Shown: positions 749 to 52,180 of the stretch, one piece after another
Layout: each line of letters opens with the position of its first letter
How positions within the stretch are numbered: position 1 is the stretch's first letter
Virus record (IMG/VR): IMGVR_UViG_3300050821_002957
Span: 310,001 to 374,000 of that record
Reading direction: 5' to 3' (one strand)
DNA: 64,000 nt
Notes under the pieces: model-generated
Databases searched by the model: none
Seen by the model: only the letters and a program-made list of their open reading frames with translations
Told to the model about the DNA's origin: nothing
Made by a program: the position numbers and the translations under genes

Positions 749-1872
749 TTTCTTCCTACCCGAATCACTGACATTTCTGGCAACGGTTCTTTGAGTCTTG
801 GATCGATAACTACACTACCATTTACATTTACGGCTCCGCTCTTCACCAGACGACTGCCCTCTGAGACCGAAGATGCCAAACCCATCAGCACCAAGACTCG
901 ATCCAGGCGTGTATTGACCGAATGAAAAACCGGAATTCTTACAACTGGAATATCGACCGGCGCTTCACGATCTGAAAATCTCTTTGTCCATTCAATTTCA
1001 GCGGTGTCTGCTTTTGGTTCGTCATGTAACCAATGAACAATTCGCCATGCCAAATATTTCTTAGATTGAAATGGTTGAGGATGCCAGCCACATTTATTTG
1101 GAAACAGAACCTCTTGCCATTGGCGCATTACATCATCAGCAATCGACATAACTTTGCTGAACATTTCAAATGGTTCATCCAGCAAACCAATGTGATTACC
1201 GAACGACTTGGACATCTTTCGACCGTCCGTACCAAACAACAAAGGAACCGTCGCAATAACCTGAGGTTTCTCACCACGATCATGCATGTACATCCGGCCC
1301 ATCAGCATGTTGTAAAATTGATCGTTGCCGCCAAGTTCAATATCTACACCTTCTCTGAAAGAGTCATATGCCTGAAGCATGGGGTATAACATCTCATGCA
1401 TAAAGACCGGAGTGTTTGTTACCTTGCGTTCTTTAAAATCGTCACGGCCACCGATTTGACTGAGGGTGAAATGGGACATGAGACGAATTACATCTTGCAT
1501 CTTCATCTCGTCAAACCATTCGGCATTCTTTTTGACGACGGTTTTGGTTCGATCCAAAATTTTGAAAGCCTGTGTCATATAGCTCCAGGCGTTCGTATTG
1601 ATTTCATCGTCAGAAAGCGCAGGCCGAAGCTGATTGCGCCCGGTCGGATCACCAATCGATGCTGTGGTGTTGCCGACGATCATCACAATGGTGTGCCCAG
1701 CATCCTGAAATTCACGCATCTTTTTCAACAGCACAGCATGACCAAGATGTAGGTCTGGTGCTGTGGGATCGAATCCGGCTTTCACACGTAACGGATGACC
1801 TGACGCAATAAGAGCATCAAACTCCTTTTCGTCGAGGAGTTGCGTAAACCCGGATTTGAGTGATTGTTGCAC
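724..1872 (-). CDS. tyrS: Tyrosyl-tRNA synthetase
   Basis: GFDPTAPDLHLGH (HIGH), YPMLQAYD, GGNDQ, KMSKS, C-terminal S4 domain. Confidence 0.96.
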   Translation of the reverse strand: MQQSLKSGFTQLLDEKEFDALIASGHPLRVKAGFDPTAPDLHLGHAVLLKKMREFQDAGHTIVMIVGNTTASIGDPTGRNQLRPALSDDEINTNAWSYMTQAFKILDRTKTVVKKNAEWFDEMKMQDVIRLMSHFTLSQIGGRDDFKERKVTNTPVFMHEMLYPMLQAYDSFREGVDIELGGNDQFYNMLMGRMYMHDRGEKPQVIATVPLLFGTDGRKMSKSFGNHIGLLDEPFEMFSKVMSIADDVMRQWQEVLFPNKCGWHPQPFQSKKYLAWRIVHWLHDEPKADTAEIEWTKRFSDREAPVDIPVVRIPVFHSVNTRLDRVLVLMGLASSVSEGSRLVKSGAVNVNGSVVIDPRLKEPLPEMSVIRVGRKWLKITQS

Positions 1873-1895
1873 CCAACTAGTTTAGCATATGAAAA

Positions 1896-2213
1896 TTAAT
1901 CGTCAACCACTTTACCGCCTCGGATCACTTGTGCATTGAACGTGACTTTGGCAGTTCCGGCGAAAGGACTCATTGGTTGCGGTCGGCCTTCAGAATCGGT
2001 AAAGACGGGAAGCTGCCGTACAACTTTTTCGGGGATATCAAGTGTCGTAAAAAGTTCGTCAAAAATTTTCTGGATGCCTTTGTTCAACTCTTCTCTGCTG
2101 GCACCGAAAATTTCTTTCTGAAATTTTCCTGGTAGGGCAACATTGGCGACGAATTCCTGGACACCATCTTTGATTCCATAGTCACTAAAACGAACAAGTA
2201 TCACTTCTCTCAT
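1896..2213 (-). CDS. Hypothetical protein
   Basis: Start moved to ATG 2213, 5 nt after the late-type CTAAATG motif and downstream of a terminator. Confidence 0.6.
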   Translation of the reverse strand: MREVILVRFSDYGIKDGVQEFVANVALPGKFQKEIFGASREELNKGIQKIFDELFTTLDIPEKVVRQLPVFTDSEGRPQPMSPFAGTAKVTFNAQVIRGGKVVDD

Positions 2214-2230
2214 AACTGCATTTAGACAAT

Positions 2231-2265
2231 AAAAAAAGGAGCAGATCCTAAGACCCACTCCCTTT
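2231..2265 (-). terminator. Rho-independent terminator after the C1 peptidase
   Basis: Minus strand GGAGTGGGTC-TTAG-GATCTGCTCC-TTTTTT. Confidence 0.8.
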
Positions 2266-2293
2266 CTAGACATAAGACTGAACAAAAACTATT

Positions 2294-3088
2294 TTAGGCG
2301 ACCTGAGTGATCTGCCAGAAATCGTCTGCAAGATTTCCATCAAGCAAGTACTCGAACGGCATGTAGAAGTAACCCTTTGCGCCCCAGAAAGGACCCCAGG
2401 AATTACGGACGATGAAAGTACGAGGCGGTGCGCCATTGACTGTCGTGTTGGTTGCATTGTAGCCGACAACCAATACAGCATGTCCACCCAATAGATTTTC
2501 AGAAGCAGCAGGCATCGGAACAATTCCGGTTGCTGCTACTTGTGCGCTTTCAAAAGAATCATAGACGCTGAATCCGATCACGAACGGGAAACCCGATGCG
2601 AGGCAGGACTGCATTGCGTTCAATTCTTGTGGAACACTTGCGTATTGAATGGCCTTGCTCTTCAAAGCAGTCGTATAGCAAGAGGCCGGTGGCTTCTCAG
2701 TGAACTTTGAAGTGTTATAAGGCCATGTTGCTTCCGGTGGGACTCCCCAGGTTGCTACGGCTTTGATGCCATCGCTAAGAGTTGCGCCGGAATCCGAAGA
2801 TACAGTGCCTTCTTCGACACGCTCATTGTAATAAATGAACAGGCGAGATGGCATGAAAATCGGAAGTTTCAATTTAATCTGATCGTATTCAATTGCGCCT
2901 GCGATAGCATTTGCAGTGCATGATCCGAGTTGCTGCTGGTTGTAACAGGCAGGACATCCTGAACGCATGTCTACGAAAGTAGCGATCTTTTCAGGTGCAA
3001 TCCGTGCTGCGAAGATTCTTTTGCGATGGTCAGGAAGAGACGGCTTCCAGCCATATTTCTTGCCGAGTGGAGAGAGTTTGTTGCTCAT
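2294..3088 (-). CDS. Papain-family (C1) cysteine peptidase
   Basis: QQQLGSCTANA (catalytic Cys), GGHAVLVVGY (His), IVRNSWG (Asn); start ATG 3088 lies 5 nt after CTAAATA. Confidence 0.92.
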   Translation of the reverse strand: MSNKLSPLGKKYGWKPSLPDHRKRIFAARIAPEKIATFVDMRSGCPACYNQQQLGSCTANAIAGAIEYDQIKLKLPIFMPSRLFIYYNERVEEGTVSSDSGATLSDGIKAVATWGVPPEATWPYNTSKFTEKPPASCYTTALKSKAIQYASVPQELNAMQSCLASGFPFVIGFSVYDSFESAQVAATGIVPMPAASENLLGGHAVLVVGYNATNTTVNGAPPRTFIVRNSWGPFWGAKGYFYMPFEYLLDGNLADDFWQITQVA

Positions 3089-3124
3089 GCTGCTATTTAG
3101 CAGCATAGAAATCGTTGTCAACTA

Positions 3125-3505: not shown

Positions 3506-4083
3506 AATACCAGCTTTCGTTCGATTTCTGCCGCCATACGAAGATCAGTAATTCGCACAATCGGCAACACCCAATTCTGTGTTTCAAGTTTGTACTTGTT
3601 CCGGCGAGCTTCTTCCCACTTGCTCAAATCGGTCACGTTGTCAATCCGGTCACAACCTTTGATGCGGCGAGGACGAGCATCGGCGTGTGTCAACGTCATA
3701 TAATATTCATCGTCGGGCCGTTTTGCACGAGCTACCAATTCGCCTGTAATTGGATTGAACGACGGCAATTCTTTGGACAATACGATAATATCTTCGTACA
3801 TTTCTTGCCCGAACAGATTCACTATTACCGAAGTTGGAACATAACAATCTTCGACGATATCATGCCCAAGTCCCAACGCTACATGCATAGCGTCGGCGTA
3901 ACCATAAGTCATCGCAACGTCGAATGCAACACGGCGAACGTGCTCAAAATACCGTTCACCAGTCAGACGGCGGCTCTGCTTACGATGCGCTTCCTTGACC
4001 AACCAATACATGCGCTGGACATACGACAGTTCATCAGCATTCAAATACTCAGCCATCGTATTGAAAAATTCTTTACGGTTCAT
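3502..4083 (-). CDS. HD-domain (p)ppGpp hydrolase-like protein (small alarmone hydrolase, Mesh1/SpoT-HD)
   Basis: AHRKQSRRLTGERYFEH, GHDIVED, IKGCDRIDN. Confidence 0.88.
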   Translation of the reverse strand: MNRKEFFNTMAEYLNADELSYVQRMYWLVKEAHRKQSRRLTGERYFEHVRRVAFDVAMTYGYADAMHVALGLGHDIVEDCYVPTSVIVNLFGQEMYEDIIVLSKELPSFNPITGELVARAKRPDDEYYMTLTHADARPRRIKGCDRIDNVTDLSKWEEARRNKYKLETQNWVLPIVRITDLRMAAEIERKLVL

Positions 4084-4090
4084 GATTTTT

Positions 4091-4120
4091 ACGCTATCAC
4101 AGTAGATACATCGTTGTCAA
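4091..4120 (-). promoter_or_regulatory. Sigma70-type promoter, leaderless, with TAGATACATC box in spacer
   Basis: TTGACA-N18-TAGCGT, ATG 7 nt downstream. Confidence 0.6.
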
Positions 4121-5379: not shown

Positions 5380-5679
5380 TTATGCTCCGATCTCGATGGT
5401 GGGCATTTCCATTCCGGCAGCAAAGCCATGCCGAGTATAAAATGACTTGATAGGGATCATTGCCGTTTTAAAGGACTTTTCAGTACCGTCACCGTTCTGA
5501 ATGAAATGCATCAGCTTTTTCGCAGATCGAATGGGAGCATTCCAATACGCCCAACCATCACTGCAAAGATTGACTTGATCACGAAAATCGGAGAGGAATT
5601 TAGCCGCTTGATAAGTGGGTGTGTCTGGACGATATTTACGAACAGCACTATCGATTTCGTTTTCATTCATGTAGTTCAT
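5380..5679 (-). CDS. Hypothetical protein (early)
   Basis: Directly behind a strong sigma70-type promoter. Confidence 0.7.
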   Translation of the reverse strand: MNYMNENEIDSAVRKYRPDTPTYQAAKFLSDFRDQVNLCSDGWAYWNAPIRSAKKLMHFIQNGDGTEKSFKTAMIPIKSFYTRHGFAAGMEMPTIEIGA

Positions 5680-5685
5680 AAGAAG

Positions 5686-5729
5686 ATTCTATCAAATGGA
5701 TGGTGTCATGTCAAGAGAAGATGTATCTT
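5686..5729 (-). promoter_or_regulatory. Sigma70-type leaderless promoter with upstream AAGATGTATCTT box
   Basis: TTGACA-N17-TAGAAT, ATG 6 nt downstream. Confidence 0.75.
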
Positions 5730-8046: not shown

Positions 8047-8179
8047 ACGAACAGGCTATCATTCAACTGGTCGGAATGGAAAGTAAGTTAGCGGCAGGCC
8101 CCGTCAGAAATACCAGTGCGAAGCGTTGCGAAACCTGTTCTCTACTAGACAAAATCTGATTCCATGATGTAATGGGATC

Positions 8180-8692
8180 ATGCACATTGACGATCTCATG
8201 GCGATGATTGACGCTGATGTCGGTGTTCCATTGCGCCGTGATCATGTCGAATGGGAATCCAGTAGGACCCAGGCGTTACATCAAAAGTATCGCAAGATTC
8301 TCTATTACGAAAAAGTCGAACTGGATCGAATGAAAGCGGCGATTGATCCGCTACGTAAACTCAAGCGTGACTATTACAGCGGCAAGAGTGAAAAGCCCTC
8401 GCCTCTGAAGCCTGACACCAAACTCAAAATCACTACAGAAGAGACGACGGCATCCAAGCGTGTCATCAAAGACGAACTAAGTTTCTGGGTAGACTGTGAT
8501 CCAGATGTCATCGCCGCCCGAGACCTCGTTTCTCAGCAGGCGGAAAAAGTAGAGCTTATCAAAGACACTCTTGACGACATCAGAAAGAGATCCTTCAGTT
8601 TAAGTACAATTTTGAATTCGCAACGGTTTAAACATGGTCTGGAAAATTTGGGCCAAGTGATTGACATGAGCGATCCTGATTACGAAAGATGA
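8180..8692 (+). CDS. uvsY: Recombination mediator UvsY
   Basis: Helical protein with LHQKY, YYSGK, D.D, I.KRSF; synteny with uvsW. Confidence 0.75.
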   Translation: MHIDDLMAMIDADVGVPLRRDHVEWESSRTQALHQKYRKILYYEKVELDRMKAAIDPLRKLKRDYYSGKSEKPSPLKPDTKLKITTEETTASKRVIKDELSFWVDCDPDVIAARDLVSQQAEKVELIKDTLDDIRKRSFSLSTILNSQRFKHGLENLGQVIDMSDPDYER

Positions 8693-11959: not shown

Positions 11960-12628
11960 ATGACAGATACCAAAGAACTAGAAATTACGCCACCCAAAAA
12001 GGCTACGACTCACTACGTTGACAACAAGAAATTATTTGCTGCACTAGTCGAATGGCAGAAGGATTTAAAGCGAGCGCACCGGAAGAAAGAACCGAAGCCG
12101 CAACTTCCCGAATACGTCGCCGAGTGCATGATGAAGATGGCGAATCGACTTTCTCAGAAGGCCGGATTCGTGAACTATACGTATCGAGAAGACATGGTAG
12201 GCGATGCCCTCGAATCATGTCTACGTTATATTCACAATTTCAATCCTGCAAAAAGTAACAACGCCTTTGCTTACATTACGCAAATTATTCATAATGCATT
12301 TATTAGGAGAATCCAGAAAGAACAGAAGCAGCTTTACGTCAAAATGCGTATTGTAGACGATGCTGACTTCGTAGGTTCGTATGAAAGGCAGGAAGGAGAC
12401 TCGACACAGTACAACAACTCTTATGTGACTTATCTACAGGAAAATAAGGGCGACGTGATTTCCAAATTTGAAAGTTGGAAAGAGTCGAAGAAGACCAAGG
12501 CAAATGCAAAGAAGAAAGAGGCAAAGCTGCTGGCTGGATTGTTTGTCGAAGAAGAGCCAGATGCAGCGGTTGTCGTGACAGTTACACCGAAAAAGAAAAA
12601 AGCGAAGGTAGCAAAGGCAAAGAAATGA
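11960..12628 (+). CDS. gp55: Late-transcription sigma factor gp55
   Basis: HYVDNKKL, FVNYTYREDMVGDALESCLRYIHNFNP.KS.NAFAYITQI..NAFIRRIQKEQKQ. Confidence 0.96.
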   Translation: MTDTKELEITPPKKATTHYVDNKKLFAALVEWQKDLKRAHRKKEPKPQLPEYVAECMMKMANRLSQKAGFVNYTYREDMVGDALESCLRYIHNFNPAKSNNAFAYITQIIHNAFIRRIQKEQKQLYVKMRIVDDADFVGSYERQEGDSTQYNNSYVTYLQENKGDVISKFESWKESKKTKANAKKKEAKLLAGLFVEEEPDAAVVVTVTPKKKKAKVAKAKK

Positions 12629-15452: not shown

Positions 15453-16537
15453 CATTGATCGGAGACACACACGCAGGGCATAAGAACGATAGCCTTCTGT
15501 TTCAGGACTACTTCAAGCGCTTTTACGATCAGGTGTTTTTTCCTGAATTGGAAAAGCGTAGTATCTCAACCATTATCCATGTGGGGGACGTATTTGACCG
15601 CCGTAAGTATGTCAATTTTCATATTCTTCAGCGAACGAGAGTTGATTTCTTGGAAAAATTGGCCGACTACGATACCCATTTCCTTTGTGGGAATCATGAC
15701 GTTTATTTTAGGGACTCCAATGAGACAAATGCCTTAAGAGAGCTTGTCTATGGACGCTATTCTAAGATTCACATCTACGAAGAGCCACAGGAGCTTGTCA
15801 TTGATGGTCTAAAAATCCTGCTTATGCCGTGGCTCAATCCTACGAACATGGACACTGGTCTCAGCATGATCGAACGTAGCACTGCATCGGTTTTGATGGG
15901 TCATTTAGAAATTGCTGGGTTCAAATTTGATCAGACTCAGGTGTGTGAGCATGGAATGGACAAGAACATTTTCGGCAAATTCAAGAAGGTGTTTTCCGGT
16001 CACTTCCATCATGCCTCAGAAGAAGGTCCGATCCGTTATCTTGGTGCGCCCTACGAATACACCTTTGCAGATCTGAACGATCCCAAAGGCTTCTACATCT
16101 TTGACACCGATACTTTAGAGCTTGAGTTCATTCAGAATCCAGAGCGAATGTTCTATCGAGTGATCTATGACGACCGGGAAGAAGATGCCGCCGAGAAGTT
16201 GCTGGGAATGGACTTCAGTGAGTTTGAAGGCAAGATGGTTCGGATCATTGTGCCATACAAGAACAATCCGGTCCTGTACGAGCAGTGGATCGACAAGCTG
16301 ATTCAGAACAATCCATCTGAGTGGTCCATCAAGGAACAACTGTCTCTTGAAGTGGATGGCGAAATCGAAGAGATGATGTTCGAGGAATTCAAGGTTGAAG
16401 GTGGTCAGGTCGTTCATGGCGGCACCGCTGAGATCCTGGACAAGTACATTGATGCTCTAGAAACCGATGTGAATAAAGACCGGCTTAAGGGTGTGCTGAG
16501 AGAATTGTTGGTCGAGGCTACGGCGTCTGTAAGTTGA
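15443..16537 (+). CDS. gp47: Recombination nuclease gp47 (Mre11/SbcD-like)
   Basis: GDTH, GDVFDRRK, GNHD, GHLE, SGHFH; TTG start with GGAG upstream. Confidence 0.93.
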   Translation: MEIALIGDTHAGHKNDSLLFQDYFKRFYDQVFFPELEKRSISTIIHVGDVFDRRKYVNFHILQRTRVDFLEKLADYDTHFLCGNHDVYFRDSNETNALRELVYGRYSKIHIYEEPQELVIDGLKILLMPWLNPTNMDTGLSMIERSTASVLMGHLEIAGFKFDQTQVCEHGMDKNIFGKFKKVFSGHFHHASEEGPIRYLGAPYEYTFADLNDPKGFYIFDTDTLELEFIQNPERMFYRVIYDDREEDAAEKLLGMDFSEFEGKMVRIIVPYKNNPVLYEQWIDKLIQNNPSEWSIKEQLSLEVDGEIEEMMFEEFKVEGGQVVHGGTAEILDKYIDALETDVNKDRLKGVLRELLVEATASVS

Positions 16538-16561
16538 CAAAAACCTGCTCCGTGGTGTAAT
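16534..16561 (+). promoter_or_regulatory. Sigma70-type promoter, 16-nt spacer, leaderless
   Basis: TTGACA-N16-TGTAAT with extended TG; ATG 6 nt downstream. Confidence 0.7.
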
Positions 16562-16567
16562 AGGTCT

Positions 16568-21802: not shown

Positions 21803-21883
21803 AAAAAAGAGAAGATTTTTGGATCAATGCCGTAGAATTGTTAGAAACTTGACAGATCCCAAAATCGTGCGAATCTAGTTGTC

Positions 21884-25645: not shown

Positions 25646-25653
25646 AAATGCAT

Positions 25654-27067: not shown

Positions 27068-27073
27068 CGATCC

Positions 27074-27116: not shown

Positions 27117-27123
27117 CTGAAAG

Positions 27124-29562: not shown

Positions 29563-29592
29563 TTAGATGCAACATTGGTGGTACGATGAGTT

Positions 29593-32031: not shown

Positions 32032-32055
32032 ACTCTATATAGGATTCAAAATATC

Positions 32056-36515: not shown

Positions 36516-36545
36516 TTGACATTAGATGTATCTAAATGCTAAGAT
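36516..36545 (+). promoter_or_regulatory. Sigma70-type leaderless promoter with perfect TAGATGTATCTA box in spacer
   Basis: TTGACA-N18-TAAGAT, ATG 6 nt downstream. Confidence 0.75.
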
Positions 36546-36551
36546 TGGTTT

Positions 36552-37514
36552 ATGGAAAACGTACTTGAACAGAACATCTTCGAGGCAGAAACGTTTGAAT
36601 TTAAGCCTCTAAAGCGTACCGACATCCATCGTCCTTCGGCGATCAATCCTAGCGAATATCAATTTGTCGCTTACGAATTTCTTCCTGGTGGAGCATGGCA
36701 GTATCTTGCCGTTCAGCGAGAGATCATTCGTAACCATATGGCCCGGACGGGCGGCAACTATAGCGGACATGATCACGGCGGTAACTGCATGGTCTGCGGT
36801 AATGTTCTTGCCATCTACACCGTTCTTTTCTATCACGAAAAATCCAACACCTACGTTCGCATGGGTGATATTTGCGCTCGGAAGGTTGAAATGGCCTTCG
36901 ACAATTCGGCGTTCAACCGCTTTAAGGACACCGTGAATGGCTGGCGCAGAGCCGTGGCTGGAAAGAACAAAGCAATGAACACGCTCATGGAGAAGGGCTA
37001 TGGTGATGCCTGGGATCTCTTTGAGACTCGTGAGAAAAATTGGAAGGATTACAAATACGAAGAGAACACCATCTGCGATATCGTCGGCAAGCTGGTCAGA
37101 TACGGGAACATTTCAGACAAGCAGATGAACTTCATCGGTCGTCTTTTAACTCAGATCGATGGTCGTGTCGTCATCGCCAAGAAACGTGCCGAAGAAAAGG
37201 CGTTGGCGGCTCCGGTTCCGACTGGCCGTTTCGTCATCGAAGGAAAGATCGTCTCTCGCCAGTACAAGAGCGACATCATGTACCCGGCTTTCAAGATTAC
37301 CGTGAAGCATGTTTCTGGCTGGTGTGTCTATGGCACGCTCCCGGCATCGCTCGAAGATGCTAAGGTTGGCGATTTTGTTACGTTCTCTGCCACCGTAGAA
37401 GTTTCTGACGGTGATCAAAAATTCGGTTTCTTCAGCCGTCCAGCGTGCGGTAAGATCCTCCCTGGACCCAGCGTAGATGACATTCTGACCGTGGCGTCGC
37501 AAGAGGTAGCGTAA
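36552..37514 (+). CDS. Hypothetical protein (CxxC zinc ribbon, C-terminal OB-like region)
   Basis: CMVCG...GDICA; IEGKIVS...VYGTLP...GDFVTFSATV...FGFFSRP. Confidence 0.7.
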   Translation: MENVLEQNIFEAETFEFKPLKRTDIHRPSAINPSEYQFVAYEFLPGGAWQYLAVQREIIRNHMARTGGNYSGHDHGGNCMVCGNVLAIYTVLFYHEKSNTYVRMGDICARKVEMAFDNSAFNRFKDTVNGWRRAVAGKNKAMNTLMEKGYGDAWDLFETREKNWKDYKYEENTICDIVGKLVRYGNISDKQMNFIGRLLTQIDGRVVIAKKRAEEKALAAPVPTGRFVIEGKIVSRQYKSDIMYPAFKITVKHVSGWCVYGTLPASLEDAKVGDFVTFSATVEVSDGDQKFGFFSRPACGKILPGPSVDDILTVASQEVA

Positions 37515-37531
37515 TACCTCTTGCGTTTTTT
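37499..37531 (+). terminator. Rho-independent terminator overlapping the next promoter
   Basis: GCAAGAGGTA-GCGTAA-TACCTCTTGC-GTTTTTT; TTGCGT-N18-TACAGT promoter overlaps it. Confidence 0.8.
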
Positions 37532-37557
37532 GAGAACACCATGATACAGTAGACATC

Positions 37558-38553
37558 ATGACGCTTCCGACATCGAAAACAGAATTTGCAGTCGTCTATT
37601 TCCCTTTTCAATGTAGTAACCTTCTTGCTTGTCACTCAAGCATCTTAAAGGACGCAGCACAAACTCACAACAGAATTGTCATTGCACTTCCTGTTCGCCG
37701 GATCTCACCATCAAAAGATTCTCCGTTGGATTTTGTGACTCGCCAACAGATGATCCAACAACAATTTCAGAATGCTATTATTGTCCCGGTGGTAGATACC
37801 AAATATCCCCAGAACAAAGTTAAGGCGCTTGAAACTGCGGTCGCTGCTCCATTTTCAGAAATGCGTGGGAAGTGCGATTTGTACACCGATGTCAATTTTG
37901 CAAACCTGTATCGGGCGCATGGTGGGAAATGGCAATGTGCGGATCTGGCTCAGGATGTTTTCGTACAGGAAGCGGCGAATCGAAAACGAGTTCAATTCAA
38001 TATCGGAATGGCACAGGATTTCAAATTGGCCGATGTTCAGCACGCCTACCGGATCGGCCTCATTAAAGGTCTGAACGACCAATTTCCAATCTCATGGACC
38101 ACCGTCGATATTTGCATCAAGCGAGTGATCAACGGTAAAACTTTTATTCTACTCGGTAAGAAACCAGGAGAGAATGGTTGGCGCTTTCCTGGTGGATTTA
38201 AAGATCGTGGCGACATGAGCTTCGAGATTGCTGTTATTCGTGAAGCCAGTGAAGAAATTCTTAAACCCGGCGTCAATCCAGTCAATACATTGATGTTCCC
38301 GGAATACATAGGCAGCAAGAACGTTGATGACTGGCGCTACAAAGGTGAGATCGACGGCATCAACACGCTGTTCTATCAGGTCACGTTTATTGGCGAAGAC
38401 GACGACATCAAAGCTGGGGACGATCTTGCAGAAGCCGAGTGGTTTGAGTTGACCAGAATTGATCCTCCTATTCTCGAAGGCGAACATTTGAATCTGTACA
38501 ACATGCTTCTAGTGCATGAAGGAATGACACATGAAAAATCCACTGGCAAATAA
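37558..38553 (+). CDS. NadM-Nudix-like protein (degenerate NMN adenylyltransferase fold plus ADP-ribose pyrophosphatase-type Nudix)
   Basis: FQ...H, SPLDFVTRQQMI; TVDI, WRFPGGF, REASEE, AGDDLAEAEWF. Confidence 0.8.
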   Translation: MTLPTSKTEFAVVYFPFQCSNLLACHSSILKDAAQTHNRIVIALPVRRISPSKDSPLDFVTRQQMIQQQFQNAIIVPVVDTKYPQNKVKALETAVAAPFSEMRGKCDLYTDVNFANLYRAHGGKWQCADLAQDVFVQEAANRKRVQFNIGMAQDFKLADVQHAYRIGLIKGLNDQFPISWTTVDICIKRVINGKTFILLGKKPGENGWRFPGGFKDRGDMSFEIAVIREASEEILKPGVNPVNTLMFPEYIGSKNVDDWRYKGEIDGINTLFYQVTFIGEDDDIKAGDDLAEAEWFELTRIDPPILEGEHLNLYNMLLVHEGMTHEKSTGK

Positions 38554-38924: not shown

Positions 38925-38954
38925 TTGACAATAGACACATCTTCCTGATAGGAT
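38925..38954 (+). promoter_or_regulatory. Sigma70-type promoter of the NAD genes with TAGACACATCTT box
   Basis: TTGACA-N18-TAGGAT, ATG 8 nt downstream. Confidence 0.7.
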
Positions 38955-38962
38955 CTAACTAA

Positions 38963-40186
38963 ATGAATCTACAAAATCCCAAATTGGTTGACAAAATCCA
39001 CAAGACACCAACGAAAGTAGTTCTTTTCGTAACAGGTGGTGGTCTGGAAATTTTCCAAACCTTGACTCATCGTGGCGGCGGCTCGGCTACGCTCCTGTCC
39101 GGGCTGATTCCGTATGACACTCAAGAGACCATCGAATTGCTTGGTGGAGTCCCAGAAAAACTGGTCAGTGAGAAAACTACACGAGAGATGGCAATGGTGG
39201 CCTTCCAGCGTGCTCTGAAGCTCTCAAAAGGCGAATACCCAGTCATAGGCGTGGCGGCGTCGGCAGTGCTTCAGAAGACGCCGTATGAGCGTGAAGGTCG
39301 AAAGCATTTTGTCTATGCTGCACTCCAGACCGACACTAAGACGGTTTCCTGTGTTCTGGACCTACATGATGGTATTGCAGAACCAAAAGACACCGGACCA
39401 ATTCCACCGGATCATGGTGTAGGATTGCGAATCATGGAAGAAATGATCACAGCCAATTTGATTCTGAATTTGATTGCCGAAGGTTGTGGACTGGAAGAAC
39501 GAATTACTCTTGGTTATGGTGTCGAAGACGATCTGACCCGGCGTGAATCGACCTTGACCGGAATTTCGATCAACAAAATCATGAGTGGTCATCCAGTTTC
39601 GTTCGACTTGGGCAAAGACACCAAAAAAATTGAAACCGCCACATTCAGTTCGACTAGTTACCGAAACATTTTCCCAGGTCGATTCAATCCGATCCATGCT
39701 GATCATTGGGAGATGTGCGCTCTCGCCTGCGAACAATTTGGTTTCGTCGAATTTGAAATCTCCATTGGCAATGTCGAAAAACCCACATTGGATTTGATTT
39801 CTCTCGAAGAGACGCTGAAGCAATTCTGCCAAGAAAGAACGCCACCATTGCCAGTTTACTTCAGAGTGTGGGTGACCAATGCTCCCACTTTTGTCCAGAA
39901 AGCCGACATGTTTCCGGGCGCAACGTTCATTGTTGGCTATGACACAGCAAAACGTATTTGCGACCCAAAGTATGCCGGAAACATCGAAGAAGTAATGGAA
40001 GTGTTCAAAAAAAATGACGTTGATTTCCTGGTGTTCGGACGTGAACTGAATGGAGTCTATAAAGCTGATGTTAGTGAATTTCCGACTTCGTTTCGACAGA
40101 TTGTTGTTACGAATACTGAGCCACGTCAGTACTCAAATATCTCTTCTTCAGAGATCCGTCGCCGCACGTCAGAAGGGCATGAATGA
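38963..40186 (+). CDS. CinA/PncC-like domain fused to a NadD-type (NMN/NaMN) adenylyltransferase domain
   Basis: N: VTGGG...GGSATLL...PY...VSEKTTREMA; C: FPGRFNPIHADH, F.VGYDTA.R, ISSSEIR. Confidence 0.78.
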   Translation: MNLQNPKLVDKIHKTPTKVVLFVTGGGLEIFQTLTHRGGGSATLLSGLIPYDTQETIELLGGVPEKLVSEKTTREMAMVAFQRALKLSKGEYPVIGVAASAVLQKTPYEREGRKHFVYAALQTDTKTVSCVLDLHDGIAEPKDTGPIPPDHGVGLRIMEEMITANLILNLIAEGCGLEERITLGYGVEDDLTRRESTLTGISINKIMSGHPVSFDLGKDTKKIETATFSSTSYRNIFPGRFNPIHADHWEMCALACEQFGFVEFEISIGNVEKPTLDLISLEETLKQFCQERTPPLPVYFRVWVTNAPTFVQKADMFPGATFIVGYDTAKRICDPKYAGNIEEVMEVFKKNDVDFLVFGRELNGVYKADVSEFPTSFRQIVVTNTEPRQYSNISSSEIRRRTSEGHE

Positions 40187-44922: not shown

Positions 44923-45627
44923 ATGAGCCATTTTACCGTACTCGTTATTACTCCCAACGGTACGGAGCAGGAAGCCGAAGCTCTGCTTGCTCCATACTGT
45001 GAACACACCGAAGTAGAACCTTACCAGACTCAGTGTTGGTGTGTCGGCATCAATGCTAGGAAATCAGTTCGAGAAGCTGTCACCCTCGAAATGCCCATTG
45101 AAAAGGCCAGAGATGAATTCTTGGCCCGAGAAGATGTCTGCAATCTGATCGAAGAATCCAAAAAGGCCGGAAATTATGGATTTTCTGAAGAAGTAGATAG
45201 GTTATGGGACGAGCGATTTGACAAACCTTTTGAACTTCGAGAAAAGGAATTGCTTGCTGCTCGGCCTGATCGTGATGCAGCAGATCCGACTTGCGATGAA
45301 TGCAAAGGCACCGGCATCGAGACGACAACGTACAATCCTCGGTCAAAATGGGATTGGTACGAACTTGGTGGTCGTTGGTGGGACCTGCTTGCGGTTTTTC
45401 AAGGTGAACCTGTTTCCAAATTTCTAGAAGCCAAAGGTGAAGACGATCAACCGTTCCGCACCTTTGCGATCATTACTCCTGACGGACAGTGGCTCGAAGC
45501 TGGTAAATTGCTTTGTTTCGCTGTTGTCGCCGAAGAAAAAGATCCTAGAGAATGGGAAGCCTGCTATAACGAAACACTAGACAAATATCGAGACCATAGG
45601 GCATTGTTTTACGATTGCCATATTTGA
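44923..45627 (+). CDS. Conserved phage hypothetical protein (paralog 2)
   Basis: MSHFTVLV...LAPY...YNPRSKWDWYELGGRW...YDCHI. Confidence 0.8.
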   Translation: MSHFTVLVITPNGTEQEAEALLAPYCEHTEVEPYQTQCWCVGINARKSVREAVTLEMPIEKARDEFLAREDVCNLIEESKKAGNYGFSEEVDRLWDERFDKPFELREKELLAARPDRDAADPTCDECKGTGIETTTYNPRSKWDWYELGGRWWDLLAVFQGEPVSKFLEAKGEDDQPFRTFAIITPDGQWLEAGKLLCFAVVAEEKDPREWEACYNETLDKYRDHRALFYDCHI

Positions 45628-45648
45628 ACACTGTGCTATGATACTCGT

Positions 45649-46719
45649 ATGTCCGTCGAAAACGACAAAACGGGTCTTCTGGATCGGGATTCATTTCGTA
45701 ATGGGGTGTTTCTGCGTGACGGGTACAAGTGTGTAATCTGTGGTGCCTCTGGCGTGCGTTTAGACGCTCACCACATCATCGAAAGACGCCTATGGGATGA
45801 TGGTGGCTATTATCTGGACAATGGCGCTACGCTCTGCGATGAGGGTCTTGCTCATCACATGCGTGCGGAGGAAACAGTTCTTACTTGTGACCAGATCCGC
45901 ACTGCCGCAAACATCAAACGAGTAATCATTCCTGACCATCTGTACAACGACTATAATTACGATAAATGGGGCAATATTCTCAACCCGGACGGCAGTCGCA
46001 CCAAAGGCGAACTGTTCAACGACGAATCGGTCCAGAAGGTTCTAAAAGCTGGCGGCGTCCTTGATCAATTTCGAGCATATGTTAAATATCCTCGGACATA
46101 TCATCTTCCTTGGTCACCCGGTCTGACTGACGATGATCGAATGTTGCCCTCGACCAAAATATTTGAAGGTCGTGAAGTTGTCGTTACTGAGAAGATGGAC
46201 GGCGAGAATACGACGCTCTATCGTGACTACATGCACGCTCGGTCTCTTGAAGAAGAGCATCATGAAAGTCGGGGATGGGTGAAAAAACTTCATGCCGAAA
46301 TCTGTTGGAACATTCCTGAGGGCTGGCGCATCTGTGGTGAAAATTTGTATGCGCTTCATTCTGTAGGATATCAAAACCTTCTTTCTTATTTCTTAGTTTT
46401 TTCAATTTGGGATCAAAATAACATCTGCCAGTCGTGGGATGATACAGTAGAGTATGCAGCAGTGCTCGGCCTGCAAATGGTTCCGGTGATCTATCGAGGA
46501 ATTTGGGATGAACGTCTGGTAAAGTCTTTTTCGGATAGCATTGATACTAAAAAGCAGGAAGGTTATACCGTTCGTGTGACTGATGCCTTTGCTTATGGTT
46601 CTTTCCGAAAATCGATTGCAAAATGGGTCCGCAAAGGTCACGTCCAGACGACGCATAATTGGAAAATGAGATCGGTAGTAAAAAATGGGCTAAGTCATGA
46701 AACCAAAGTTGCAACCTAA
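45649..46719 (+). CDS. HNH domain fused to an ATP-dependent RNA ligase domain
   Basis: RDGYKCVICG...DAHHI...NGATLC; KYPRTYHLPWS, TEKMDGEN, CGENL, EGY, AKWVR. Confidence 0.85.
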   Translation: MSVENDKTGLLDRDSFRNGVFLRDGYKCVICGASGVRLDAHHIIERRLWDDGGYYLDNGATLCDEGLAHHMRAEETVLTCDQIRTAANIKRVIIPDHLYNDYNYDKWGNILNPDGSRTKGELFNDESVQKVLKAGGVLDQFRAYVKYPRTYHLPWSPGLTDDDRMLPSTKIFEGREVVVTEKMDGENTTLYRDYMHARSLEEEHHESRGWVKKLHAEICWNIPEGWRICGENLYALHSVGYQNLLSYFLVFSIWDQNNICQSWDDTVEYAAVLGLQMVPVIYRGIWDERLVKSFSDSIDTKKQEGYTVRVTDAFAYGSFRKSIAKWVRKGHVQTTHNWKMRSVVKNGLSHETKVAT

Positions 46720-47047: not shown

Positions 47048-47062
47048 CGATACATAGTTCAT

Positions 47063-47347: not shown

Positions 47348-47384
47348 CACATCTATTGACATTGAAAAATAGATGTAGTAAAGT
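47344..47384 (+). promoter_or_regulatory. Leaderless sigma70-type promoter with two TAGAT-N2-ATCTA-like boxes
   Basis: TTGACA-N17-TAAAGT; boxes at 47344 and 47370. Confidence 0.65.
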
Positions 47385-47390
47385 TGAGCT

Positions 47391-47594
47391 ATGATTCCTG
47401 TTATGGAGATGCAAAAGACCGTATCGATTACGGCGGAAGAAAAATGGAAGCAAGGCGGAATGGATCAGCAGATTCGTCTTGAAATGTTGGCGGTCATCGG
47501 TCAACCTCGTTGCTATGCCAGCGAGTCCTGGAAGAAGTTACCCCACGTCCTGAAACTCAATCTCAGTGCCCGAAAATGGACCCAAAAAAGTTGA
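47391..47594 (+). CDS. Hypothetical protein
   Basis: Directly behind promoter. Confidence 0.6.
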   Translation: MIPVMEMQKTVSITAEEKWKQGGMDQQIRLEMLAVIGQPRCYASESWKKLPHVLKLNLSARKWTQKS

Positions 47595-47640
47595 TGTAGC
47601 TACTTGACATTGGCGTCGTTCCAATGTTAAGATACATCTA
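47591..47640 (+). promoter_or_regulatory. Leaderless sigma70-type promoter with two boxes
   Basis: TTGACA-N18-TAAGAT; TTGATGTAGCTA upstream, AAGATACATCTA over the start site. Confidence 0.7.
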
Positions 47641-47972
47641 TGAGATACGAAATCTGGACCAACGAGACGAACGATCCGGCCAGGGAATATTTTGGGTTTG
47701 ACGGGTATCGTCCCGGCGCTCACATGAAGCTGGCTTATTCCAATCTGATCGCTTCCAATCCTGATGCTCACGATGCTGCACTTGAGCGCCTTTTCGAGAA
47801 GTTTAACATCGACCAACCGGCTGATTATAAAGCACATTCTCTTAGTGTCGGTGATGTGGTTGTGCTTATCGATTCCGGTGTCCGTACTGCATACGCCTGT
47901 GAATCGTGCGGTTGGAAGGCACTTTTGGTTTTCGATCCGACCTTGAAGAATCCGGCCTGGGGGACACGATGA
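47640..47972 (+). CDS. YodL-like domain protein
   Basis: LERLFEKFNIDQPADYKAHSLSVGDVVVL...AY.C...GW. Confidence 0.75.
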   Translation: MRYEIWTNETNDPAREYFGFDGYRPGAHMKLAYSNLIASNPDAHDAALERLFEKFNIDQPADYKAHSLSVGDVVVLIDSGVRTAYACESCGWKALLVFDPTLKNPAWGTR

Positions 47973-48641: not shown

Positions 48642-48644
48642 CCT

Positions 48645-50521: not shown

Positions 50522-50958
50522 TGGACGAATCTCCGTATCAAGGCATCAGATTCTCGTAACAACTCTAGCAATCCAGGATGAAATTGGTGTGGTTTTTCCA
50601 TTGCAATCTGAATAACTATGCTGTACGGCAACCAAGCAATGAAGCTAGTCTCAAATAGATATTCTGGCTCTGCCTTGAATTCAAACTCCTCAGGAACGAT
50701 TCCGATGAAACTGTGATATTGGAAACCCTTTCTGCTGCTTATGTGCGCTTGGTGAAGTTCAATGGGGCCGTAGTAGCCAACCTCCTCACCCATCTCTCGG
50801 AGAGCGCTAGAGGCCACGGAAGAGCCATCCTCGACCATTCCACCGACGATGCCCCAGACATCGCCTTGACGGATGCCGGGTGCTCTCCAGGAAAGACATA
50901 AATTTTTGGTGTTTGCGGCAATTGGAAGAATTCCGCTTGCCAGAGAAAATTTTTTCAT
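50518..50958 (-). CDS. NUDIX hydrolase
   Basis: GGMVEDGSSVASSALREMGEEVG. Confidence 0.8.
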   Translation of the reverse strand: MKKFSLASGILPIAANTKNLCLSWRAPGIRQGDVWGIVGGMVEDGSSVASSALREMGEEVGYYGPIELHQAHISSRKGFQYHSFIGIVPEEFEFKAEPEYLFETSFIAWLPYSIVIQIAMEKPHQFHPGLLELLRESDALIRRFVQ

Positions 50959-51482
50959 CTTCCGAACCGTTTGAACATCTCTTTGTCAATGGTAGGAAGA
51001 TCAAATAAATCTGTCGGTTCCTTTGCTGCTCTGAATTGAGGACGATTGAAATGTCCCATGTGAAGACCAACTTTGGCACACTCTTCGGCGAACAATTGAT
51101 AGCCGTTTTGGTTGGTAGGACGTTCTTTAAAATTGGGTGAATAATTCAGCTTGCGATTGCCATCTACCCAGACGACCGTAGCTGCCTCACCCCAGTTGTG
51201 CCAGGAGCAACCAGGAAGATCGTCGGTCATGAGATTTGTTTCTTTAGGTTTCCCTTTTGCCATGCAGTCGGCTAAGTACGGCGCACCAGCATGTGTCAGT
51301 GCCATGACTTTCAATTCTGCATCTGTTGCACTGCGGCCTTGTCTCCACATGGCTGCTTGTTCGAGGGGAGAGACAAGTGTAACGAGAGGTTCAAGCAAGA
51401 AACGATGCTTTTTCGTCGCTTCAATTGCTTCAATCAGTTTCTTGCGAAACTCCGGGATCAGTAAGGATAATTCGGTCGCCAT
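50955..51482 (-). CDS. M15-family peptidase-like protein with degenerate active site
   Basis: EQAAMWRQGR, T...PG.SWHNWGEAA; start 5 nt after CTAAATA. Confidence 0.7.
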   Translation of the reverse strand: MATELSLLIPEFRKKLIEAIEATKKHRFLLEPLVTLVSPLEQAAMWRQGRSATDAELKVMALTHAGAPYLADCMAKGKPKETNLMTDDLPGCSWHNWGEAATVVWVDGNRKLNYSPNFKERPTNQNGYQLFAEECAKVGLHMGHFNRPQFRAAKEPTDLFDLPTIDKEMFKRFGR

Positions 51483-51602
51483 AAATGTATTTAGTGACCG
51501 CCTTGGAGATTCGGTTTATAGATGGAAAAATCAGCCATGTCATCCAACCGACATATCCACCGATAATCAAAATCGCAACAAAAGTTCCGCAGAATTGTGC
51601 AA

Positions 51603-52115
51603 TCATTGTTGAGCCATCCATGAATAGAGATTTGAAAGGTCGAAATTGTTCAATTCGTCTAGTGTCTCTGGAATCGTAGTGTGATGAATTGCTATTCCAC
51701 CGGCCTCACGCCATTCGGCAACGTTACGAGGATGGTCGTCGATTAATAAATTCACAACTCCATCAATCACAGCAAAATCTTTCTTCTCACTACGACACAC
51801 GATGTGAATGTACTCATCTGCAATTCCTAATTCCTGAAAGCACCATATTCGTTTCTCTTCCGGGCAAGAAGGTGCATCATCTGGGTGTGGGGATGCTGAA
51901 AGAATGTATGGATTGTATATTTTGATTCGTTCCCACAGTTGCATAGCACCCGGCATCCATTCTAAATTTATCCAAAATCCAGTGATTGCCTGAATTAGTG
52001 CCCATTTTTCTTTGTCGGTTCCGAGACATGGATCGTTGAATTCTCGGCCAAGTGCCCTGCGTGCGCCGCCAAGAAAATTGACAAGAACTTGGTCCATGTC
52101 ACAGTAGACTTTCAT
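51603..52115 (-). CDS. HAD-family 5'(3')-deoxyribonucleotidase-like protein
   Basis: CDMDQVL, EKRIW, LIDD...N..EW..AGG..I. Confidence 0.85.
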   Translation of the reverse strand: MKVYCDMDQVLVNFLGGARRALGREFNDPCLGTDKEKWALIQAITGFWINLEWMPGAMQLWERIKIYNPYILSASPHPDDAPSCPEEKRIWCFQELGIADEYIHIVCRSEKKDFAVIDGVVNLLIDDHPRNVAEWREAGGIAIHHTTIPETLDELNNFDLSNLYSWMAQQ

Positions 52116-52121
52116 TGCTTC

Positions 52122-52180
52122 ATCCTACCATGTCTTTAGAATCTGTCTACTGTTGACGAAATTTCAAAGGGTGCTAAATT
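52122..52180. promoter_or_regulatory. Divergent 16-nt-spacer promoters for the HAD gene and gp43
   Basis: minus TAGACA-N16-TAGGAT; plus TTGACG-N16-TAAATT. Confidence 0.6.

What the first reader, a model, noticed from the sequence alone, without database searches (positions are those of the whole stretch)
1872..52149. Pervasive predicted leaderless transcription from both sigma70-type and late promoters
At least 14 sigma70-type promoters end 5-8 nt before the start codon with no SD (starts 4083, 5679, 8180, 16568, 21884, 27124, 29593, 36552, 37558, 38963, 45649, 47391, 47640, 52115). Late-type motifs (CTAAATA, CTAAATG, CTACATA, ATAAGTA) lie 5-6 nt before starts 1872, 2213, 3088, 9584, 20465, 25645, 47063 and 51482. 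Downstream genes are mostly ATGA-coupled. This differs from coliphage T4. It suggests a leaderless-rich host, and perhaps a way to keep translating while SD-dependent host initiation is suppressed.
Basis: partly seen in the sequence, partly recalled or inferred. Interest (0 to 1): 0.7.

Follow-up and report, generated by a model that had tools for sequence, protein, structure and literature searches.

The report
Leaderless genes in giant soil phage
In this 405-kb T4-like soil phage, most host-type promoters and about a third of its own late promoters sit directly against start codons, so roughly a fifth of its genes are predicted to be made from messenger RNAs with no leader and no ribosome-binding site; this is a known way of expressing genes, but not one I found described for T4-like phages.

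Summary
The core observation holds and is far beyond chance, but no transcription start site has been mapped. Genome-wide, the extended -10 motif TGnTAnnnT is followed exactly 6 nt later by an ORF-opening ATG 45 times, against about 2 at other distances. CTAAAT shows the same peak, 29 against about 2. Of 87 strong sigma70-type promoters, 51 end 5-8 nt before a start codon. These starts lack SD. The base before the start codon is a pyrimidine in 83-100% of cases, against 49% for other genes, as expected at a transcription start. The geometry is conserved in diverged relatives of 31-51% GC. It is absent from T4 and from the closest cultured cyanophage. Four sites are weaker. Four carry the Aeh1-type late motif CTAAAT[A/G]. 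Three (9584, 20465, 47063) are unsupported. "Mostly ATGA-coupled" is overstated. Soil metatranscriptome contigs could not resolve start sites. The idea of escaping suppressed SD initiation is not supported: the capsid gene and about 40% of other genes use SD. The phage also encodes a full-length IF3, whose nearest cellular relatives are Acidobacteriota, a moderately leaderless-rich phylum and the best host lead.

The parts
1870..1906 (-). Sigma70-type promoter fused to the GTG start (1872) of the tyrosyl-tRNA synthetase gene.
   Evidence: TTGACG, 16-nt spacer, TGCTAAACT, 6 nt, GTG; matrix score 17.3. TyrRS assignment: phrog_9270, E 1e-69.
4081..4120 (-). Sigma70-type leaderless promoter and ATG 4083 (HD phosphohydrolase-like gene). 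The AGATGTATCT box lies in the spacer.
   Evidence: TTGACA, 18-nt spacer, TGATAGCGT, 7 nt, ATG; score 19.0.
5677..5714 (-). Sigma70-type leaderless promoter and ATG 5679. An ATACATCT box lies just upstream of the -35.
   Evidence: TTGACA, 17-nt spacer, TGATAGAAT, 6 nt, ATG; score 23.0.
27065..27102 (-). Sigma70-type leaderless promoter and ATG 27067.
   Evidence: TGCTAGACT, 6 nt, ATG, opening a 194-aa ORF.
27088..27126 (+). Sigma70-type leaderless promoter and ATG 27124 (812-aa peptidase, phrog_459).
   Evidence: TTGACG, 17-nt spacer, TGTTATGAT, 7 nt, ATG; score 18.8. Orthologues in L002, L003 and L004 keep a -35/-10 pair 6-8 nt before the start, and their N-termini align.
29559..29595 (+). 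Sigma70-type promoter 5 nt before GTG 29593 (MoxR/AAA_5 ATPase). This is a less certain leaderless case because the start is GTG and the gap is 5 nt.
   Evidence: Score 14.0. The N-terminus matches the orthologues. The L003 orthologue has a gap of 7, whereas the L002 and L004 orthologues have leaders.
36516..36554 (+). Sigma70-type leaderless promoter and ATG 36552, with the AGATGTATCT box in the spacer.
   Evidence: TTGACA, 18-nt spacer, TGCTAAGAT, 6 nt, ATG; score 22.7.
38925..38965 (+). Sigma70-type promoter 8 nt before ATG 38963 (cytidylyltransferase-like gene). The predicted 5' UTR is 0-2 nt.
   Evidence: TTGACA, 18-nt spacer, TGATAGGAT, 8 nt, ATG; score 22.0.
45615..45651 (+). Sigma70-type leaderless promoter and ATG 45649 (RNA ligase).
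   Evidence: TTGCCA, 16-nt spacer, TGCTATGAT, 6 nt, ATG; score 19.4. A low-depth RNA contig (45606-45805) also crosses the site, so read-through from the upstream gene is possible.
47356..47393 (+). Sigma70-type leaderless promoter and ATG 47391.
   Evidence: TTGACA, 17-nt spacer, TAAAGT, 6 nt, ATG; score 15.7.
47604..47642 (+). Sigma70-type leaderless promoter and ATG 47640 (YodL-like gene).
   Evidence: TTGACA, 18-nt spacer, TGTTAAGAT, 6 nt, ATG; score 21.5.
52113..52149 (-). Sigma70-type leaderless promoter and ATG 52115.
   Evidence: TAGACA, 16-nt spacer, TGGTAGGAT, 6 nt, ATG; score 15.9.
8146..8182 (+). Weak candidate: TAGACA, 16-nt spacer, TGTAAT, 6 nt, ATG 8180 (UvsY).
   Evidence: Score 9.8. 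The TGTAAT variant is not enriched genome-wide. The start fits the N-terminus of the UvsY family.
16534..16570 (+). Middling candidate: TTGACA, 16-nt spacer, TGTAAT, 6 nt, ATG 16568.
   Evidence: Score 13.7.
21849..21886 (+). Weak candidate: TTGACA, 16-nt spacer, GAATCT, 7 nt, ATG 21884.
   Evidence: Score 11.8; the -10 is poor.
37521..37560 (+). Weak candidate: extended -10 TGATACAGT, 7 nt, ATG 37558 (NUDIX gene), after a terminator-like hairpin. The -35 is poor.
   Evidence: Score 6.8.
2211..2225 (-). Late-type CTAAATG, 5 nt, ATG 2213, after a terminator-like hairpin.
   Evidence: Member of the enriched CTAAAT[A/G] class.
3086..3100 (-). Late-type CTAAATA, 5 nt, ATG 3088 (C1A cysteine protease). 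A TTGACA also lies 16 nt upstream, so a dual early/late promoter is possible.
   Evidence: CTAAATA plus 5 nt plus ATG is conserved in the orthologues L109 (81% identity) and L108 (63% identity, 34% GC).
25643..25657 (-). Late-type CTAAATG, 5 nt, ATG 25645.
51480..51494 (-). Late-type CTAAATA, 5 nt, ATG 51482.
11960..12628 (+). gp55-type late sigma factor, the presumed reader of CTAAATA.
   Evidence: phrog_234 'late sigma transcription factor', E 1.1e-53.
31936..32754 (+). gp45-type sliding clamp, the activator of late transcription in T4. The true start is probably near residue 41 of this ORF.
   Evidence: phrog_223, E 3e-39, matching residues 41-270.
35507..36010 (+). RegA-type translational repressor, another phage control on translation initiation.
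   Evidence: PF01818, E 1e-35.

Best explanation
The window lies in a 405.6-kb T4-like phage genome from soil. It has gp43, gp41, UvsX/Y/W, gp46/47, gp44/62/45, RegA, gp55 and a gp23-type capsid protein, in Kyanoviridae-like gene order.

In this phage two promoter classes are built directly against start codons.

Class 1 is a host sigma70-type promoter:
- Its form is TTGACA, a 16-18 nt spacer, TGnTAnnnT.
- It often carries a palindromic AGATRYATCT box, either abutting the -35 or inside the spacer.
- Its -10 hexamer usually ends exactly 6 nt before an ATG.

Class 2 is a gp55-type late promoter:
- Its form is CTAAAT[A/G], with no -35.
- It ends 5 nt before the start codon.

By the usual geometry, the -10 spans -12 to -7 and the T4-type late box spans -13 to -6. 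That puts the A of the start codon at +1, preceded by a pyrimidine at -1. RNA polymerase would therefore begin the transcript at or within 0-2 nt of the AUG.

The first gene of such a unit would then be translated as a leaderless mRNA, through recognition of the 5'-terminal AUG with initiator tRNA and without an SD pairing. Downstream genes in the unit use SD sites or overlapping stop/start coupling.

About 109 of 578 crudely called genes (19%) are of this kind. They account for 51 of 87 strong sigma70-type promoters, and for 32 of the 94 CTAAAT[A/G] copies that lie outside gene interiors.

What is shown: the motifs, their spacing, their excess over chance, the absence of SD, the -1/+1 signature, conservation in relatives, and absence from T4 and a cyanophage.

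What is inferred: the start sites themselves, the leaderless translation, the early and late timing, and the host (probably Acidobacteriota, whose genomes are reported to hold 10-19% leaderless genes).
For: - Gap distributions made without gene calls show sharp peaks.
- Promoters chosen by an independent marker, the GATRYATC box beside the -35, give 33 distinct sites. Twenty-five have a gap of 6, two a gap of 7, one a gap of 8 and one a gap of 10. Only three have leaders and one has no ORF.
- The matrix scan finds 87 sites against 2-4 in shuffles. Fifty-one have a start codon at 5-8 nt, and 48 of those are ATG.
- SD cores lie upstream of 7% of leaderless starts, 41% of other genes and 4% of controls.
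- A pyrimidine sits at -1 in 40 of 48 sigma70-type sites and 26 of 26 late sites, against 230 of 469 other genes. Fisher p is 3e-6 and 2e-8.
- Orthologues keep the geometry while their flanks diverge. The peptidase does so in L002, L003 and L004 (51%, 41% and 31% GC). The C1A protease keeps CTAAATA plus 5 nt plus ATG in L109 and L108.
- CTAAATA starting at -12 is the predicted late promoter of the T4-like phage Aeh1 (PMC1524935; PMC2988020).
- gp55 and gp45 homologues are present.
- In soil metatranscriptomes, depth rises from about 3.5 to about 52 across the CTAAATA box upstream of the capsid gene.
- TANNNT 6-7 bp before ORFs is the accepted signature of leaderless genes in bacteria (PMC3160421; PMC12340547).
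- Controls on T4 and S-SRM01 show no such peak.
Against: - No start site is mapped. Only assembled RNA contigs were available, and their ends are not transcript ends.
- One low-depth contig runs 43 nt upstream of ATG 45649, which could be read-through or DNA carry-over. In run X5 the capsid contig runs through its promoter.
- Gene calls and start choices come from my own crude caller, so the percentages are rough.
- Gaps of 5 or 8 nt, and GTG starts (1872, 29593), fit leaderless translation less well.
- The phage encodes IF3, which in E. coli is reported to disfavour leaderless mRNAs.
Confidence: 0.8

Rival explanations
1. The promoters are real, but most translation of these genes does not come from leaderless transcripts. 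Polymerase might start 1-5 nt away from the A, giving very short leaders or cutting into the codon. The proteins might instead be made mainly from longer read-through polycistronic mRNAs.
For: Gaps vary from 5 to 8 nt. An RNA contig crosses the 45649 promoter, and in run X5 the capsid contig runs through its promoter. Many of these promoters lie just after, or inside the end of, a co-directional upstream gene.
Against: Exactly 6 nt is by far the commonest gap, at 38 of 51 sites. The pyrimidine(-1)/A(+1) signature is centred on the start codon. No SD is available for internal initiation on read-through RNA. The 56-bp divergent region 27068-27123 leaves no room for leaders.
Confidence: 0.12
2. 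Leaderless mRNAs would let the phage keep translating while it suppresses SD-dependent initiation in the host.
For: A precedent exists. Thermus phage phiYS40 makes mostly leaderless middle and late mRNAs and is reported to shift the host IF2/IF3 balance (PMC3594737). This phage carries its own translation genes: IF3, TyrRS, 44 tRNAs and RegA.
Against: The capsid gene and many other CTAAATA-driven genes have leaders with GGAG. About 41% of non-leaderless phage genes carry an SD core. No S21, IF1 or IF2 gene was found. No tool here can detect a factor that cuts or masks the anti-SD.
Confidence: 0.07
3. The pattern is an artefact of chance and start-codon choice. The true starts would lie downstream behind ordinary ribosome-binding sites.
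For: Several weak sites (8180, 21884, 37558) score within the range of shuffled sequence.
Against: The peaks appear without any gene calling, with p of about 1e-41 and 1e-23. Conserved protein sequence begins 3-8 codons after the proposed starts. The next in-frame starts lack SD or lie far inside conserved domains. The arrangement is conserved in relatives.
Confidence: 0.03
4. The TAnnnT and CTAAATA elements next to start codons are translation signals, such as A/U-rich non-SD ribosome-binding sites, and not promoter -10 elements.
For: They occupy the position where a ribosome-binding site normally lies.
Against: They come with a TTGACA -35 at 16-18 nt and an extended -10 TG. CTAAATA also precedes leaders of 13-50 nt, as at the capsid gene, where RNA depth steps up. 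Its spacing matches the geometry of T4-type late promoters.
Confidence: 0.03

Closest known systems
Bacterial 'TA-led' leaderless genes: a -10 motif adjacent to the ORF, as in Deinococcus-Thermus, Actinobacteria and others (Zheng 2011, PMC3160421; Zhong 2025, PMC12340547)
   Same: TANNNT lies 6-7 bp before the start codon and there is no SD. A second set of genes uses GGAG. The share of genes involved, about 19%, is similar.
   Different: Here the pattern is in a phage. It comes with a near-consensus -35, an extended -10 TG and a palindromic box. It also extends to a second, phage-specific promoter class.
Thermus phage phiYS40, with leaderless middle and late transcripts
   Same: It is a large phage in which many transcripts are leaderless and translation initiation factors are involved (PMC3594737).
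   Different: phiYS40 is not T4-like, and there the early genes are the leadered ones. It is reported to lower host IF3. This phage encodes an IF3 of its own, and its main structural genes keep SD leaders.
gp55/gp33/gp45-dependent late promoters of T4-like phages, in the Aeh1 variant CTAAATA
   Same: The motif is the same and there is no -35. gp55 and gp45 homologues are present. The motif precedes the capsid gene.
   Different: In T4, and in the cyanophage tested, late promoters lie 20 nt or more upstream of SD-led starts. Here about a third abut the start codon.
Coliphage T4 early promoters
   Same: They are host sigma70-dependent and have a strong -35/-10 with an extended -10.
   Different: T4 has leaders of 25-37 nt with SD. 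Here 59% of the strong promoters have none.

Membership tests
Leaderless (TA-led) genes | A -10-like TANNNT ends about 6-7 nt before the start codon, more often than chance allows | tested here: met
   45 cases at gap 6 against about 2.3 at other gaps, and 51 of 87 strong promoters.
Leaderless (TA-led) genes | No Shine-Dalgarno sequence before the start | tested here: met
   7% carry an SD core, against 41% of other genes and 4% of controls.
Leaderless (TA-led) genes | The mapped transcription start coincides with the start codon (5' UTR of 0 to a few nt) | tested here: inconclusive
   Only assembled metatranscriptome contigs were available, and their ends are not start sites. The pyrimidine(-1)/A(+1) signature supports the prediction indirectly.
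Leaderless (TA-led) genes | The 5'-terminal codon is AUG and is used for initiation | not testable with these tools
   48 of 51 are ATG, but 90% of the other genes are ATG too. Use in translation needs proteomics or toeprinting.
T4-type late (gp55) promoters | An 8-bp TATA-type box at -13 to -6 with no -35 element | tested here: met
   CTAAAT[A/G] occurs 114 times, 94 of them outside gene interiors, with no -35. It matches the Aeh1 variant.
T4-type late (gp55) promoters | The phage encodes gp55 and the sliding clamp gp45 | tested here: met
   phrog_234 E 1e-53 and phrog_223 E 3e-39. The Pfam gp45 models did not match.
T4-type late (gp55) promoters | The co-activator gp33 is present | not tested
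   No search was run; the protein is small and poorly conserved.
T4-type late (gp55) promoters | The promoter drives late, structural genes | tested here: inconclusive
   The motif precedes the gp23 homologue, and RNA depth steps up there. Timing cannot be read from metatranscriptomes.
T4/Tevenvirinae expression layout (leaders with SD on all promoter classes) | Promoters lie 20 nt or more upstream of SD-led starts | tested here: not met
   The peak lies at 5-8 nt here. T4 and S-SRM01 show none at that distance.
phiYS40-type strategy (leaderless mRNAs plus a shifted IF2/IF3 balance) | Phage-driven change in initiation factors that favours leaderless mRNAs | tested here: inconclusive
   The phage encodes a full-length IF3 and no IF1 or IF2. 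The direction of any effect is unknown.

The most novel reading that the evidence does not exclude
A clade of giant T4-like soil phages, probably infecting Acidobacteriota, has moved both its host-sigma promoters and its gp55 late promoters onto start codons. It uses its own IF3, which appears to sit behind a late promoter, to shift ribosomes during infection between leaderless mRNAs (mostly early and accessory genes) and SD-led mRNAs (capsid and other bulk structural genes). That would be a phage-encoded switch of translation mode, acting alongside RegA.
Probability: 0.12. Interest if true: 0.8.

Novelty: new variant of a known kind. Interest (0 to 1): 0.5.

Why it matters
Leaderless expression is usually treated as a trait of certain cellular lineages and of a few phages of Thermus and actinobacteria. 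Here it appears as the main layout of host-type promoters, and of a large share of gp55-type late promoters, in a T4-like megaphage and its uncultured relatives.

- **Annotation.** Gene finders that expect an SD will misplace these starts.
- **Host prediction.** The expression style and the IF3 gene together point to Acidobacteriota.
- **Phage biology.** The genome combines leaderless genes, SD-led genes, a phage IF3, RegA, a TyrRS and 44 tRNAs. That makes it a good system for asking how a virus divides ribosomes between initiation modes.

The promoter rules are simple enough to test directly with reporters.

Tried and rejected
- **RNA evidence.** Two soil metatranscriptome lay-outs gave assembled contigs only. 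The capsid region is well covered, but contig ends are not start sites, and window 45600-51599 is almost silent. There is no start-site test, and both read-laying runs are used.
- **Close relatives.** Searches by DNA in cultured phages and by single-protein patterns in viral contigs found nothing. Relatives came from the protein search and contig look-ups instead. Two look-ups had no DNA held.
- **Host from TyrRS and Prs.** The atlas neighbours are of mixed phyla. TyrRS is 38-47% identical to most Acidobacteriota matches, and I had no outgroup.
- **Leaderless signature in a candidate host.** A 400-kb sample of one Bryobacterales genome gave only a weak excess at 6-10 nt, with no -35 enrichment. 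I rely on the published survey instead.
None shows genome-wide positional enrichment.
- **Other factors.** No S21, IF1, IF2 or AsiA was found. The AsiA and Pfam gp45 searches had no positive control.
- **IF3 in the relatives.** Their records are not held, so this could not be checked.
- **phiYS40.** The primary paper is not held, so a review is cited instead.

Full report
**What the window is.** The window is bases 310,001-374,000 of a single 405,631-bp contig at 46% GC. IMG/VR classes the contig as a linear virus record that is 100% complete. Soil metagenomes hold it.

It carries the T4-type replication and late-transcription set:
- family-B polymerase gp43, about 41% identical to the polymerases of cyanomyoviruses;
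- gp41, UvsX, UvsW, UvsY, gp46 and gp47;
- gp44 and a gp62-like clamp-loader subunit, and gp45;
- RegA and the late sigma factor gp55;
- elsewhere in the genome, a gp23-type capsid protein.

The gene order matches that of the freshwater cyanophage S-SRM01 (Kyanoviridae). No cultured phage is close at the DNA level.

**Checking the observation.** All 22 listed starts have the stated motifs at the stated distances.

I tested for chance without using gene calls. For every copy of a motif in the genome, I asked at what distance the next ORF-opening ATG lies (ORF of 50 aa or more).
- For the extended -10 TGNTANNNT (773 copies), the counts at gaps 0-15 are 2, 3, 2, 1, 0, 6, 45, 17, 9, 3, 6, 4, 1, 4, 0, 2. 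The peak at 6 nt has Poisson p of about 3e-41.
- For CTAAAT (176 copies), the count at gap 6 is 29, against a mean of 2.1 elsewhere. p is about 2e-23.
- A looser -35/-10 scan gave the same peak.

A weight matrix for the -35, spacer and extended -10 finds 87 sites, against 2-4 in shuffled genomes.
- 51 sites have a start codon 5-8 nt after the -10. Of these, 38 are at exactly 6 nt and 48 are ATG.
- About 20 sites have leaders of 10-60 nt, often with GGAG.
- The rest precede no ORF of 40 aa or more within about 60 nt.

A promoter set chosen by an independent marker, the GATRYATC box next to the -35, gives 33 distinct sites. Twenty-five have a gap of 6, two a gap of 7, one a gap of 8 and one a gap of 10. 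Three have leaders and one has no ORF.

**Site by site in the window.**
- *Strong:* 4083, 5679, 27124, 29593 (GTG, gap 5), 36552, 38963 (gap 8), 45649, 47391, 47640 and 52115.
It is in fact TTGACG, a 16-nt spacer, TGCTAAACT, 6 nt, GTG.
- *Weaker:* 16568, 21884, 8180 and 37558.
- *Late motif CTAAAT[A/G]:* 2213, 3088, 25645 and 51482.
- *Unsupported:* the variants at 9584, 47063 and 20465 show no clear positional enrichment. 20465 looks like an ordinary internal gene, and its L002 orthologue overlaps the gene upstream.
Its promoter overlaps that of 27124 within a 56-bp divergent spacer.
- *Coupling:* overlap is common but not predominant. In the window, 15 of 77 same-strand junctions overlap by 4 nt and 25 of 77 overlap at all.

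**Evidence that these are transcription starts at the start codon.**

1. *Geometry.* A sigma70 -10 hexamer spans -12 to -7, so a 6-nt gap puts the A of the ATG at +1. The T4-type late box spans -13 to -6 (PMC2988020). The Aeh1 variant CTAAATA begins at -12 (PMC1524935). CTAAATA plus 5 nt therefore also puts the A at +1.

2. *The base before the start codon.* It is a pyrimidine in 40 of 48 sigma70-type sites and 26 of 26 late sites, against 230 of 469 other genes. A pyrimidine at -1 with a purine at +1 is the known start-site preference of bacterial RNA polymerase (my own knowledge). It has no known role in translation.

3. *No SD.* Seven per cent of these starts carry an SD core, against 41% of other genes and 4% of internal ATG controls.

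4. *Start codons are placed correctly.* Conserved protein sequence begins 3-8 codons after the proposed starts of the peptidase and the MoxR ATPase. Alternative in-frame starts lack SD or lie deep in the protein.

5. *Conservation in relatives.*
   - The peptidase orthologues in three metagenomic relatives, of 51%, 41% and 31% GC, all keep a -35/-10 pair 6-8 nt before the start.
   - The C1A protease orthologues keep CTAAATA plus 5 nt plus ATG (81% and 63% identical; the latter locus has 34% GC).
   - Those loci show the same gap peak and the same palindromic box.

6. *Controls.* The first 50 kb of T4, and 42 kb of the syntenic region of S-SRM01, give no peak at 5-8 nt. Their promoters lie 20-37 nt upstream of the starts.

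**RNA data.** Soil metatranscriptomes hold the phage, but only as assembled contigs.
- In run X4 the capsid gene is covered at depth about 52. The contig ends 18 nt upstream of the ATG, whereas the start predicted from CTAAATA lies 36 nt upstream. Depth further upstream is about 3.5. This is consistent with CTAAATA acting as a promoter, but it is not a start-site map.
- In run X5 the contig runs through the promoter.
- Window 45600-51599 is almost silent. One low-depth contig crosses the 45649 promoter, which could be read-through.

**How it most likely works.**
- Host RNA polymerase with its primary sigma starts at the A of the ATG on about 50 units, presumably early ones.
- Polymerase with gp55 does the same on about 30 or more late units.
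- The first gene of each such unit is translated from a 5'-terminal AUG, and later genes use SD or overlap coupling.
- The phage uses both modes at once. The capsid gene, and many large genes in its neighbourhood, have CTAAATA followed by 13-50 nt leaders with GGAG.
- The closest descriptions are the 'TA-led' leaderless genes of bacteria (PMC3160421; PMC12340547) and the leaderless middle and late transcripts of Thermus phage phiYS40 (PMC3594737).
- In the library searched, no paper links leaderless mRNAs with gp55 promoters or with cyanophage start sites.

- The phage encodes a full-length IF3 of 179 aa with both domains. A CTAAATA box lies 10 nt before its ATG.
- All but one of its 80 best matches among species genomes are labelled Acidobacteriota (Bryobacterales, Solibacteraceae, Terriglobia), at 56-63% identity. 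The exception is labelled Bordetella parapertussis.
- Acidobacteria are reported to have 9.7-19.4% leaderless genes. My own crude test on one such genome was weak.
- A moderately leaderless-rich host is therefore plausible but unproven.
- The idea that leaderless mRNAs escape a shut-down of SD-dependent initiation does not fit. The phage relies on SD for its capsid gene and for about 40% of its other genes.
- The phage adds IF3, which is reported to disfavour leaderless mRNAs on 30S subunits in E. coli (PMC8138138). That paper also cites work in which IF3 bound to 70S ribosomes promotes them, so the direction of any effect here is open.

**Verdict.** The feature is real and statistically very strong. 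It is a known expression mode in a new setting and with a new promoter class. It is still only predicted at the RNA level.

Noticed in passing
window 4083(-), 5679(-) and 36552(+) promoters; genome-wide about 33 promoters; also L002 and L003: A near-palindromic box, AGATRYATCT (often TAGATACATCTA), takes one of two positions. In about 20 promoters it abuts the -35, centred near -41.5. In about 10 it lies inside the -35/-10 spacer. This looks like the operator of a dimeric regulator that could activate one promoter set and repress the other. It is conserved in relatives.
   Followed up: partly
outside the window: G000:C1:127026-127565 (-), which is L005:2026-2565: The phage encodes a full-length translation initiation factor IF3 (IF3_N plus IF3_C, 179 aa), with CTAAATA 10 nt before its ATG. 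Its nearest cellular relatives are Acidobacteriota (Bryobacterales/Terriglobia) at 56-63% identity.
   Followed up: partly
whole genome; window 724-1872 (-): There are 44 tRNA genes in several clusters, none of them in the window, plus a tyrosyl-tRNA synthetase.
   Followed up: no
window 37558-44794 (+): A cluster for NAD and nucleotide salvage. It comprises a NUDIX gene (37558-38553), a cytidylyltransferase-like gene that may be an NMN adenylyltransferase (38963-40186), NAMPT (40342-41877) and ribose-phosphate pyrophosphokinase (43793-44794). It resembles the phage NAD-reconstitution sets thought to counter NAD-depleting defences (the comparison is from my own knowledge).
   Followed up: no
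window 59676-60587 (+): A 303-aa protein with an N-terminal Acb1 (anti-CBASS) domain, E 5e-22.
   Followed up: no
window 27068-27123: A 56-bp divergent spacer holds two overlapping promoters. Each ends 6-7 nt before its own ATG (27067 minus strand, 27124 plus strand), so neither transcript has room for a leader.
   Followed up: yes
window 14179-15452 and 17630-18067 (+): Two endonuclease VII-like genes and a GIY-YIG/homing endonuclease are inserted among gp55, gp47 and gp46. The relatives carry different HNH or GIY-YIG insertions at other places in the same module.
   Followed up: no
window 9571-9591 and 47050-47070 (+): The two unsupported 'late' sites share the string TACATAGT, 4 nt, GTGTCAGA. 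TACATA followed 6 nt later by GTG or TTG occurs 4 times genome-wide, against 0-1 at other gaps. This may be a minor third signal or a coincidence.
   Followed up: partly
outside the window: G000:C1:20921-22282 (-): The major capsid gene has a hairpin, then CTAAATA, then a leader of about 36 nt with GGAGAGAG. It is the most abundant phage RNA in two soil metatranscriptomes, at depths of about 52 and 13.
   Followed up: yes
contig ends: G000:C1:952-997 and 405066-405111, and the last 17 bases: Near-identical promoter and gene-start copies lie at both ends of the contig, and the contig stops in the middle of a TAGATACATCTATT promoter box. The assembly may be cut inside a repeat or a terminal redundancy.
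   Followed up: no
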